Shown: positions 46,651-47,031 of the stretch, one piece after another
How the letters are laid out: every line of letters begins with the position of its first letter
How positions within the stretch are numbered: position 1 is the stretch's first letter
From: Euprymna scolopes
Taxonomy: Eukaryota
Length of the DNA: 64,000 bases
Assembly (NCBI GenBank): GCA_053919585.1
Contig: CM132783.1
Direction: 5' to 3' (one strand)
The notes under the pieces: model-generated
Databases searched by the model: none
Told to the model about the DNA's origin: nothing
What the model saw: only the letters and a program-made list of their open reading frames with translations
Made by a program: the position numbers and the translations under genes

Positions 46651-47031
46651 CATCCACAGTACTGTTTCGCTGTTTCACAGCTCATTAGTGCGGCTAGACA
46701 GGCAACTGCCTCAAGCCAGGATCGAAACCCGCCCAAATGACAGTCAAGGCTTCTCACATTACGCTATACGGCTGATGCTGTGTGGGTAATGAATTAACGA
46801 CATCGTCCAAAGGCATCCGCTCGATTTGTTTGCCCAAAGAGCGTCGCTTTATATGCTAATGACGATTTGTATATCACTTCCTAATATGCTCAACCCAAGA
46901 TAGGGAGCATTATAGTCATCCACACATCCACATACAGTACTGTTTCGCTGTTTCACAGCTCATCAGTGTGGCTAGACAGGCAACTGCCTCAAGCCAGGAT
47001 CGAAACCCGAAAACCCAAATGACAGTCAAGG
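46651..47031 (-). mobile_element. Retrozyme-like / Sm-alpha-like element: 278-nt unit plus ~100-nt terminal redundancy, with two hammerhead motifs and a tRNA-derived head
   Basis: Direct repeats 46656-46750 and 46934-47031, each carrying a hammerhead motif and a B box. Flanked on both sides by (TA)n. Confidence 0.8.
46928..46971 (-). ncRNA. Type I hammerhead ribozyme, intact core
   Basis: Minus strand CCACA-CTGATGA-GCTG-tgaaa-CAGC-GAA-ACAGTACTGT-A^TGTGG: 5-bp stem I, 4-5-bp stem II, palindromic stem III, GUA cleavage triplet (cut between 46933 and 46932). Confidence 0.9.

What the first reader, a model, noticed from the sequence alone, without database searches (positions are those of the whole stretch)
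46651..47031. Retrozyme-like unit: two hammerhead ribozymes 278 nt apart, predicted to release a circularisable RNA monomer
Seen: on the minus strand, 46971-46928 is a textbook type I hammerhead (CCACA-CUGAUGA-GCUG-ugaaa-CAGC-GAA-ACAGUACUGU-A^UGUGG). A second copy lies 278 nt downstream (46693-46651), with CUGAUGA>CUAAUGA and a damaged cleavage site. The element is ~1.4 units long, has no recognisable coding capacity and sits in (TA)n. Established: metazoan non-LTR retrozymes and newt/schistosome/cricket hammerhead repeats are 150-400-nt tandem units whose palindromic stem III allows dimeric cleavage, and several give abundant circRNAs. Inference: this is a retrotransposed copy of such a circRNA family. 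The terminal redundancy fits more than one round of reverse transcription around a circle. Penelope-like elements (one is at 7300-9550) are a plausible mobiliser.
Basis: partly seen in the sequence, partly recalled or inferred. Interest (0 to 1): 0.9.

Follow-up and report, generated by a model that had tools for sequence, protein, structure and literature searches.

The report
Dead copy of hammerhead retrozyme-SINE
This is a decayed, truncated copy of a very abundant (at least 24,000 insertions) mobile element of a mollusc genome whose 283-base unit joins a tRNA-like piece to a self-cleaving hammerhead ribozyme; the kind is already known, but the insertion junctions of this family give unusually clear hints about how such elements are copied.

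Summary
On the minus strand of 46651-47034 lie two ~100-nt repeats 278 nt apart, flanked by (TA)41 and (TA)29. The first carries a complete type I hammerhead core.

It is not a unique locus. It is one 1.36-unit copy of a dispersed family with a 283-nt unit made of body, tRNA-Asp-like module and hammerhead. The 5.9-Gb genome holds at least 24,401 terminal junctions.

All copies end about 14 nt past the predicted cleavage site, at ...GAUGACUA, followed by (TA)n. The 5' ends vary, with a hotspot exactly one unit upstream. The template RNA therefore spanned the cleavage site, most likely as a circle.

An abundant Neptune-like Penelope element (GIY-YIG, CX4CxxC linker) also ends in (TA)n, but it shares no sequence with the unit.

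The ribozyme fold is supported by cross-family covariation and is predicted to work as a dimer. It fails Rfam's thresholds.

This particular copy cannot release a monomer. Its second hammerhead is dead (G5>A, cleavage site deleted) and its 5' promoter module is truncated.

Poly(A)/oligo-dT RNA data show only embedded or read-through transcripts and no ends at the cleavage site, so circular RNA remains untested.

Other first-stage notes of this scan describe the same tRNA-Asp/hammerhead kind elsewhere in this genome.

Verdict: new member of a known kind (animal non-LTR retrozymes; schistosome Sm-alpha-like elements).

The parts
47036..47117 (.). (TA)41 microsatellite at the element's 5' side (target tract)
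   Evidence: TRF; sequence. 30 of 55 sampled family copies have (TA)>=4 at the 5' flank.
46978..47034 (-). 5'-truncated start of the element. It holds the 3' two-thirds of a tRNA-Asp-like module (unit positions ~183-239), so the A-box half is missing.
   Evidence: Alignment to family copies; unit coordinates.
46915..46977 (-). Hammerhead 1. Core, helices Ia, II and III are intact. The predicted cleavage is between 46933 and 46932. An 8-nt duplication (about 46927-46920) displaces the helix Ib 3' strand.
   Evidence: Model R1 gives 74.5 bits, but this hammerhead (46928-46971) is one of the ten sequences R1 was built from, so that score is partly by construction. Rfam gives only 22.6 bits.
46774..46914 (-). 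Non-coding body of the unit (unit positions ~11-159), with a 10-nt deletion relative to the family majority
   Evidence: Alignment. No ORFs. A body-only query finds 1,925 first-look candidates.
46701..46773 (-). Complete tRNA-Asp(GUC)-like module (unit positions 160-237). It has an A-box-like TAGCGTAATG, an anticodon-loop-like CTGTCAT and a B-box-like GGTTTCGATCC. In this copy it carries a 4-nt deletion.
   Evidence: ARAGORN at 85% threshold on the family majority. Controls: 8/1000 shuffles gave any call, and Asp(gtc) was called 15 times in 58 family loci and 0 times in flank controls. Nothing is found at the default threshold or by the Rfam tRNA model.
46651..46699 (-). Hammerhead 2, inactive. 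It has CUAAUGA (G5>A) and a 4-nt deletion that removes H17 and the start of the helix I 3' strand. It is the terminal hammerhead of the insertion.
   Evidence: model R1 45.5 bits.
46592..46650 (.). (TA)29 tract at the element's 3' end, which is both tail and target
   Evidence: TRF. 47 of 55 sampled copies have (TA)>=4 directly after the 3' end. There are 24,401 genome-wide hammerhead-(TA)n junctions.

Best explanation
The locus is one old (9% from the family majority), 5'-truncated, 1.36-unit insertion of a non-autonomous retroelement family. The host is a mollusc, probably a decapodiform cephalopod.

The 283-nt unit is a non-coding body, then a decayed tRNA-Asp-like module that could act as an internal Pol III promoter, then a type I hammerhead. 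The ribozyme's 10-nt palindromic helix III makes it work as a dimer with a second hammerhead.

Proposed life cycle:
1. A copy that holds two intact hammerheads is transcribed. This step is inferred, and the Pol III start in the tRNA-like module is not shown.
2. The two ribozymes pair through helix III and cut after GUA, releasing a 283-nt monomer. This step is inferred.
3. A tRNA ligase closes the monomer into a circle. This is inferred from work on mussel and axolotl retrozymes.
4. A (TA)n-specific endonuclease and reverse transcriptase, most likely that of the abundant Neptune-like Penelope element, nicks a (TA)n tract. The nicked end pairs with the only UAUA of the unit, about 14 nt 3' of the religated cleavage site, and primes reverse transcription. 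The junction itself is shown; the enzyme is inferred.
5. Synthesis usually aborts early, giving copies of less than one unit. It often stops after exactly one turn, and sometimes runs on to 1.1-2.2 units, which recreates two-hammerhead copies.

The window copy is a dead product of step 5. Hammerhead 2 and the upstream promoter half are lost, so it can release nothing.
For: Family and copy number:
- 6,547 first-look candidates; 40 scored copies are 84-88% identical over the whole 381 nt.
- 24,401 hammerhead->(TA)n junctions and 6,764 hammerhead->body junctions, with reversed-pattern controls at 0.

Fixed 3' end:
- 48/55 sampled copies end at unit position 7-16, and 47/55 are followed by (TA)>=4.
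- That 3' end lies past the cleavage site and includes the whole helix I 3' strand, so the template was not a cleaved linear monomer.

5' ends:
- They vary. 13 of the 26 unique loci of the body-selected sample (12 of the 30 as first listed) start at unit position 9-16, several of them without (TA)n upstream.
- Genome-wide, 1,301 units start straight out of (TA)n at position ~11-13, against 3,341 preceded by the hammerhead strand.

Ribozyme:
- Canonical core in the family majority; 36/85 instances are fully intact.
- Cross-family covariation: 94% of cells paired against 75% in shuffles, 11/13 pairs with changes on both sides, score 0.49 against 0.02-0.08 for slid partners.
- The dimer cofold gives the double hammerhead at -36.2 kcal/mol, against 2 x -13.5 for non-hammerhead monomer folds.

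tRNA-like module.

Penelope element:
- 6,917 first-look candidates, with open frames up to 783 aa.
- GIY-YIG at residues 671-751 and a CNKPRCGVC linker.
- Its own hammerhead, and a 3' end ...CCCATTTTA(TA)n.
- (TA)n targeting by PLEs with this linker is described in PMC8557442.

RNA of the family is present in RNA-type runs, up to 0.71 of sampled words.
Against: - No circular or monomer-length RNA, and no read ends at the predicted site, were seen in the only raw-read libraries available. Those libraries are poly(A)/oligo-dT, which select against circles.
- The hammerhead fails every Rfam gathering score.
- There is no sequence homology between the unit and the PLE family examined, so the partner is inferred only from the shared (TA)n junction.
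- The 5' hotspot could partly come from TATA/(TA)n microhomology at second-strand joining rather than from a full turn on a circle.
- The tRNA-like module is seen only at a relaxed ARAGORN threshold.
- Core positions decay about as fast as other positions in inserted copies (4.5% against 6.4%). That is expected for dead copies, but it gives no within-family evidence of selection.
- Both samples of copies were selected by similarity and are biased towards long copies.
Confidence: 0.6

Rival explanations
1. Ordinary SINE-like propagation from linear transcripts. Copies or tandem master loci are transcribed by Pol III or by read-through, including their (UA)n tail. A (TA)n-nicking reverse transcriptase primes on that tail, as LINE/SINE pairs with microsatellite tails do. 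Copies longer than one unit are inherited from tandem masters. The hammerhead only trims transcripts or is a passenger.
For: The (TA)n tail directly follows a fixed 3' end in 47/55 copies, exactly as expected for tail priming. Many RNA reads run from the element into (TA)n (327 loose ends at the 3' junction), so tailed linear transcripts exist. Most insertions are shorter than one unit (24,401 terminal junctions against 4,632 body starts), which is ordinary 5' truncation. Several long copies start near unit position 128-143, just upstream of the tRNA-like module, as a Pol III start might. Unverified scan notes report tandem arrays of a related 321-bp unit.
Against: It does not explain why about half of the body-containing copies begin within a few bases of the very unit position at which all copies end, including five without (TA)n upstream (genome-wide 1,301 against 3,341). 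No copy in the sample begins at the cleavage site, as hammerhead-trimmed linear RNA would. Progressive 5' truncation from linear templates cannot regenerate two-hammerhead copies, yet 14-28% of insertions have them.
Confidence: 0.28
2. The hammerhead motif is a catalytically irrelevant relic. The family is a tRNA-derived SINE that happens to carry a hammerhead-like sequence inherited from a Penelope pLTR, with no self-cleavage in its life cycle.
For: It fails Rfam thresholds. The monomer's minimum-energy fold is not the hammerhead. No cleavage ends are seen in RNA reads. Naiad PLEs thrive without hammerheads (PMC8557442).
Against: The family majority keeps every core nucleotide and all three helices. 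At least three co-resident families keep the same architecture with compensatory changes in all helices. The integration point leaves the terminal hammerhead exactly complete. Homologous dimer-type hammerheads cleave in vitro in axolotl and PLEs (PMC7229834).
Confidence: 0.08
3. Local satellite fragment or duplication artefact. The 1.4-unit repeat arose in place by slippage or unequal exchange within the (TA)n tract, not by retrotransposition.
For: It sits inside a microsatellite. Only 1.36 units are present, too few for TRF to report a 278-nt period.
Against: Tens of thousands of dispersed copies on all large contigs share the same 3' boundary to the base.
Confidence: 0.02

Closest known systems
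Metazoan non-LTR retrozymes (Cervera & de la Pena 2020, PMC7229834; e.g. ~350-390-nt mussel repeats, axolotl repeats)
   Same: Non-coding unit of 170-400 nt carrying one type I hammerhead. Copies range from less than one unit to multimers. The hammerhead has a short, palindromic helix III that favours dimeric action (as in axolotl). The host is a mollusc. Circular RNA has been proposed as the transposition intermediate, and PLEs are suspected as mobilisers.
   Different: This family is mostly dispersed as copies of less than one to two units rather than long tandem arrays. It has a defined 3' end with a (TA)n tail or target and carries a tRNA-like module. GC is 46.6%, against the stated <45%. 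Circular RNA was not shown here, whereas it was shown by northern blot and RNase R for mussel and axolotl.
Sm-alpha / Sj-alpha SINE-like elements of Schistosoma (Ferbeyre 1998 and Laha 2000, as cited in PMC2770079)
   Same: A high-copy (>10,000) dispersed short retroposon that combines a tRNA-derived part (called tRNA-Gln by tRNAscan there, tRNA-Asp-like here) with a type I hammerhead.
   Different: Different phylum and no sequence relationship was tested. Here the tRNA-like part is internal to a circularly repeatable unit and lies directly 5' of the ribozyme. The tail is (TA)n.
Penelope-like elements with hammerheads in their pLTRs, and the proposal that animal retrozymes are their non-autonomous derivatives (PMC4209133; PMC8557442; Li et al. 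2026, bioRxiv 10.64898/2026.07.22.740005)
   Same: Minimal dimer-type type I hammerhead near the 3' end. Partial tandem (pLTR-like) copies. Preference for (TA)n. A resident, abundant, apparently intact PLE family has the same (TA)n 3' junction.
   Different: No sequence similarity was found between the unit and the PLE examined (Li et al. found pLTR homology in Xenopus). Neighbouring inverted copies here lie tail-to-tail across a (TA)n tract (6/55), not head-to-head as in PLE insertions.
Plant LTR retrozymes (PMC4918200)
   Same: Non-autonomous, flanked by two hammerhead-bearing direct repeats that delimit a circularisable RNA.
   Different: Plant elements have type III hammerheads, ~350-bp LTRs, PBS/PPT and 4-bp TSDs, and use Ty3/Gypsy machinery. 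None of these applies here.

Membership tests
Hammerhead ribozyme, type I (Rfam RF00163 / clan CL00010) | Conserved core C3-U4-G5-A6-N7-G8-A9, G12-A13-A14, A15.1-U16.1 pair, H17 not G | tested here: met
   Met in hammerhead 1 of the window and in the family majority. Not met in hammerhead 2 (G5>A, site deleted).
Hammerhead ribozyme, type I (Rfam RF00163 / clan CL00010) | Three helices around the core, helix I open-ended, supported by covariation | tested here: met
   Helices Ia 5 bp, II 4 bp, III 5 bp (palindrome), Ib 3 bp. Cross-family covariation is 0.49 against 0.20 in shuffles (0/500) and 0.02-0.08 with slid partners. Caveats: few independent families, and the alignment was fitted to the model.
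Hammerhead ribozyme, type I (Rfam RF00163 / clan CL00010) | Score at or above Rfam's gathering threshold | tested here: not met
   No gathering hit in the window. The best clan hit is Hammerhead_3 at 22.6 and 22.4 bits, against a gathering score of 48.5. Another family in this genome reaches 57 bits on RF00163.
Hammerhead ribozyme, type I (Rfam RF00163 / clan CL00010) | Site-specific self-cleavage | not testable with these tools
   Only indirect evidence: no pile-up of read ends at the site in poly(A)/oligo-dT libraries.
Metazoan non-LTR retrozyme | Non-coding repeat unit of ~170-400 nt with one type I hammerhead per unit | tested here: met
   283-nt unit; no ORFs; one hammerhead per unit.
Metazoan non-LTR retrozyme | Head-to-tail tandem organisation (dimers to multimers) | tested here: inconclusive
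   14-28% of insertions exceed one unit. The longest seen is 2.2 units (L077). No long array of this family was found, and more genome sequence could not be fetched.
Metazoan non-LTR retrozyme | Monomer-length linear and circular RNAs in vivo | tested here: inconclusive
   The family is present in RNA runs. The reads are mostly parts of longer transcripts, and no ends lie at the site. The libraries are poly(A)/oligo-dT selected.
tRNA-derived SINE (Sm-alpha-like) | tRNA-related region with Pol III A and B boxes | tested here: inconclusive
   tRNA-Asp(gtc) is called only at 85% of the ARAGORN threshold. The shuffle false-positive rate is 0.8%, with 15 calls in 58 loci and 0 in flanks. Nothing is found at the default threshold or with the Rfam tRNA model. 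The module is not at the 5' end of most copies.
tRNA-derived SINE (Sm-alpha-like) | Dispersed high-copy insertions with a fixed 3' end, simple-repeat tail and 5' truncation | tested here: met
tRNA-derived SINE (Sm-alpha-like) | Target-site duplications | tested here: inconclusive
   Not discernible, because most copies are flanked by (TA)n on one or both sides. The same difficulty is reported for PLEs in PMC8557442.
Non-autonomous derivative of a Penelope-like element | Sequence homology to the pLTR or 3' region of a resident PLE | tested here: not met
   blastn of the unit against two full PLE copies (L091, L092) gave only chance matches. Other PLE families of the genome were not examined.
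Non-autonomous derivative of a Penelope-like element | Same integration signature as the resident PLE | tested here: met
   Both end in ...TA(TA)n. The PLE has a C-terminal GIY-YIG and a CX4CxxC linker.

The most novel reading that the evidence does not exclude
The tens of thousands of insertion junctions of this family are a genomic footprint of target-primed reverse transcription on a circular hammerhead RNA. A Penelope-type (TA)n nick primes at the single UAUA about 14 nt beyond the religated cleavage site, and synthesis tends to stop after exactly one turn. This would be the first junction-level evidence in animals that retrozyme circles, made from a Pol III tRNA-Asp-like promoter plus a dimeric hammerhead, are the transposition template and that a PLE is the mobiliser.
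Probability: 0.4. Interest if true: 0.6.

Novelty: new member of a known kind. Interest (0 to 1): 0.4.

Why it matters
Animal retrozymes and hammerhead-bearing SINE-like elements are known, but how they are copied back into DNA is still a hypothesis (circular RNA template, PLE machinery).

This family offers more than 24,000 insertions with a base-precise 3' boundary outside the ribozyme cleavage site, a one-unit 5' hotspot, and a resident intact (TA)n-targeting PLE. The mechanism is therefore testable by plain genome-wide junction statistics and by a few RNA experiments.

It also shows that a decapodiform-sized mollusc genome, a group whose genome papers report almost no SINEs, holds a large SINE-like ribozyme family that standard annotation and Rfam thresholds miss.

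For the window locus itself the result is ordinary: a dead copy.

Tried and rejected
1. Rfam at gathering and at permissive thresholds gave no hammerhead family membership and no tRNA.
2. ARAGORN at its default threshold found nothing on the window or on 20 loci. Only a relaxed threshold with shuffle controls gave the tRNA-Asp-like call.
3. Homology between the unit and the resident PLE was sought and not found. PLE partners with a related hammerhead could not be sought further.
4. I tried to build a length survival curve from counts of 30-mers along the unit and rejected it. A 30-mer that must be contained in longer copies scored lower than the junction beyond it (2,562 against 6,764), so subfamily polymorphism and CpG decay dominate. 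Only matched pattern pairs were used (and 73/74).
I did not try another route.
6. MAFFT alignment of hammerheads from different families was out of register and was replaced by a covariance-model alignment.
7. RNA reads. The 'goes back 283' joints are collinear in every genomic copy and say nothing about circles. The template-switch-oligo-joined reads at 1599 and 1641 of L006 are best explained by oligo strand invasion at (A)TG(T)GG and TGGG, not by RNA 5' ends.
8. The strand bias in X24 is dominated by one or two loci with private variants, so I drew no conclusion about the transcribed strand.

Full report
OBSERVATION. A complete hammerhead core sits at 46971-46928: CCACA, CUGAUGA, GCUG-UGAAA-CAGC, GAA, ACAGUACUGU, A^UGUGG. 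A second, damaged copy lies 278 nt downstream. The repeat finder reports a 76-nt repeat at 97% identity with spacing 278 and a 21-nt repeat at 95% with spacing 282. The 25-nt core+stem II string occurs twice in the window against 0.00 expected in shuffles. The element lies between (TA)41 (47036-47117) and (AT)29 (46592-46649). No ORF or gene lies nearby apart from artefacts across masked N runs. Rfam does not recognise the motif at its own thresholds. There is no gathering hit, and the best is 22.6 bits under the type III model, whose gathering score is 48.5. A less decayed copy gives the same result.

THIS COPY. I aligned the window copy with 28 other copies. It is the most diverged, at 9.2% from the family majority. 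Hammerhead 1 keeps the core and helices Ia, II and III, but an 8-nt duplication just after UGUGG removes the distal helix Ib. Hammerhead 2 has G5>A in the core, and a 4-nt deletion has removed the cleavage nucleotide. The copy starts at unit position ~183, inside the upstream tRNA-like module. So at most one cut is possible and no monomer can be released from this locus.

THE FAMILY. The window's genome is 5.9 Gb in 925 contigs, with at least 46 very large ones. Runs labelled 'mollusc metagenome' hold the element. The size and the number of large contigs fit a decapodiform cephalopod (n=46, 5-6 Gb; PMC13218726), but that is an inference and not a test. A search with the 381 nt gave 6,547 first-look candidates, and all 40 scored copies were 84-88% identical over nearly the whole query. 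The unit from cleavage site to cleavage site is 283 nt, with 46.6% GC and no TTTT run.

Exact-pattern counts were made with at most 2 mismatches in 30 nt, and the reversed-pattern controls were 0:
- hammerhead followed by (TA)n: 24,401
- hammerhead followed by the body: 6,764
- unit positions 3-32 preceded by the hammerhead strand: 3,341
- unit positions 13-32 preceded directly by (TA)n: 1,301
- body start: 4,632

There are therefore at least 24,000 insertions. Most are shorter than one unit, and roughly 14-28% contain two ribozyme sites. Copies are 4-9% from the majority, which points to an old burst.

ENDS. In 55 unique sampled copies, 48 end at unit position 7-16 (...GUA^UGUGGAUGACUA) and 47 are followed at once by (TA)>=4. 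The 3' boundary lies about 14 nt beyond the predicted cleavage site and just after the last base of the helix I 3' strand, so every insertion ends with a complete hammerhead. It coincides with the only UAUA of the unit. The 5' ends vary. In the sample chosen with a body-only query, which is less biased for length, 13 of the 26 unique loci begin at unit position 9-16 (12 of the 30 as first listed), so they are one unit long to within a few bases. Six of them have (TA)n upstream; five (L066, L067, L084, L085, L090) clearly do not. The others are 1.05-1.7 units, and one is 2.2 units. None starts at the cleavage site.

WHAT THE ENDS IMPLY. A monomer cut at both sites cannot be the template, because the copies contain sequence 3' of the site. 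Two templates remain. One is an uncleaved linear transcript carrying a (UA)n tail. The other is a religated circle on which a (TA)n-ended primer pairs with UAUA. The circle explains three things together: the fixed start, the preferred stop after exactly one turn (where the enzyme meets its own product), and the regeneration of copies with two hammerheads. The linear model explains the tail and the heavy 5' truncation. It needs extra assumptions for the one-unit hotspot, and microhomology with (TA)n would cover only the copies that have (TA)n upstream. I put the circle at about 0.5-0.6 and the linear model at about 0.3.

RIBOZYME. The family majority has every core nucleotide, helix Ia CCGCA/UGUGG, an internal loop, helix Ib GUC/GAC, helix II GCUG/CAGC with loop UGAAA, and the palindrome ACAGUACUGU as helix III. 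Of 85 unique instances, 36 are fully intact. Core sites changed at 4.5% and other sites at 6.4%, which is neutral decay after insertion. Other families in the same genome keep the same plan with different helices: GUCUAA/UUGGAC, GCCC/GGGC and ACUCGAGU in a family that scores up to 57 bits on RF00163, and CUGCA/UGUAG, AUCC/GGAU and ACACUAGUGU in another. On a covariance-model alignment of 55 hits, 94% of cells pair against 75% in shuffles. Eleven of 13 pairs change on both sides, and the covariation score is 0.49, against 0.20 in shuffles (0/500) and 0.02-0.08 when partners are slid. The caveats are that only a few families contribute and that the alignment was fitted to the model. As a monomer the hammerhead fold (-9.2 kcal/mol) loses to another fold (-13.5). 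Two copies cofold into the double hammerhead with a 10-bp helix III (-36.2). The ribozyme is thus predicted to be dimer-dependent, like the axolotl and PLE hammerheads (PMC7229834).

tRNA-LIKE MODULE. Directly 5' of the ribozyme, at unit positions 160-237, ARAGORN at 85% of its threshold calls tRNA-Asp(GUC). Only 8 of 1,000 dinucleotide shuffles give any call. Asp(gtc) is called 15 times in the element part of 58 family loci and never in the flank controls. It is not found at the default threshold or by Rfam. A-box-like and B-box-like motifs lie 42 nt apart. A Pol III promoter function is plausible but untested. Several unverified first-stage notes of this scan describe the same combination elsewhere in this genome.

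MOBILISER. The PLE remnant in the window (ORF fragment 8679-9185, minus strand; hammerhead at 7473-7427) belongs to a family with 6,917 first-look candidates, many with open frames of 750-783 aa. Two full copies have a C-terminal GIY-YIG domain and a CNKPRCGVC linker upstream of it. They also carry their own hammerhead about 190 nt from the 3' end, and that end reads ...CCCATTTTA(TA)n. One of them has an inverted pLTR copy upstream. PLEs with this linker are reported to prefer (TA)n (PMC8557442). The unit shares no sequence with this PLE, so the link rests on the common integration signature. Six of 55 copies have a second, inverted copy tail-to-tail across the (TA)n tract, and three have a direct one. 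This may only reflect repeated use of the same tract.

RNA. RNA-type runs of the same organism hold up to 0.71 of the sampled words, and a second organism label holds 0.41. I laid four runs on a repeat-free one-unit stretch with the site in the middle (L006:1453-1735). The family is present in poly(A) and oligo-dT libraries, but 92% of laid reads in X24 run on into unlike sequence. 327 reads pass from the 3' junction into (TA)n, and no place shows an excess of molecule ends. Oligo-joined reads near the site are best explained by template-switch artefacts. So embedded or read-through transcription is shown, while self-cleavage and circles are neither shown nor excluded.

COMPARISON AND VERDICT. 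The closest known kinds are animal non-LTR retrozymes (PMC7229834), the tRNA-derived hammerhead SINE-like Sm-alpha/Sj-alpha elements (PMC2770079), and the recent proposal that animal retrozymes are non-autonomous PLE derivatives (bioRxiv 10.64898/2026.07.22.740005). In the searched library, cephalopod papers mention hammerheads only as Rfam counts (PMC6962438). They also report almost no SINEs in decapodiforms (PMC13218726). The finding is a new member of a known kind. The window locus is a dead copy. The family-level junction pattern is the part worth following up.

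Noticed in passing
window 29592-29627 (-), tail to about 29560: Decayed hammerhead of a different family (CUGCA CUGAUGA UUCC-CGAAA-GGAU GAA AUAUUAGUAUU; 30.6 bits with model R1). Like the family studied, it is followed within ~20 nt by a (TA)n tract.
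   Followed up: partly
window 30317-30260 (-), next to the N run starting at 30198: A third hammerhead type (CUGAUGA, 26-nt helix II hairpin, GAA ACGCCGCGGC). A similar one lies in L091 at 5162, downstream of a full PLE. It may belong to another PLE family.
   Followed up: no
window 7427-7473 (-) and 8679-9185 (-); N run 7113-7267: Penelope-like remnant: an N-terminal ORF fragment of 168 aa and, downstream on the same strand, its own minimal hammerhead (CUGAAGA ... GAA ACGCGU U). The element's 3' end runs into a masked N stretch, which was left as it is.
   Followed up: partly
window 14487-14603 (+): 5S rRNA match, 75.1 bits, full length. I did not examine whether it is a gene or a 5S-derived SINE head.
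   Followed up: no
G000:C8:10432194-10435515 (L035-L043) and G000:C3:89840417-89842627: Tandem arrays with a period of ~410 nt of another hammerhead family that passes RF00163 (53 and 48.6 bits). There are at least 9 units on C8. On C3 two blocks lie in opposite orientation. They share the GGGTTTCGAATCC...GTCTAA module upstream of the ribozyme.
   Followed up: partly
L092:895 (-) against L092:4379 (+): A full PLE copy with an inverted copy of its hammerhead-bearing 3' region immediately upstream of the ORF, which is the classical PLE head-to-head arrangement.
   Followed up: no
L006:1599 and L006:1641 (run X23): 21 and 50 single-cell reads join the template-switch oligo to the element at ATGTGG (0-5 nt from the predicted cleavage site) and at TGGG. 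This is probably oligo strand invasion, but the first place coincides with the ribozyme site.
   Followed up: partly
window 46200-46310 (+), beside an N run: Short open frame reading ...HRRDVASLSLLYRYFQDKCSSEL..., which resembles the C-terminal part of LINE ORF2 proteins (recalled from memory, not tested).
   Followed up: no
L034 and L031, around 540-620 (-): At the relaxed ARAGORN threshold, units of the RF00163-positive family give tRNA-Ala(tgc) and tRNA-Thr(cgt) calls. This hints that different hammerhead families carry different tRNA-like modules.
   Followed up: no
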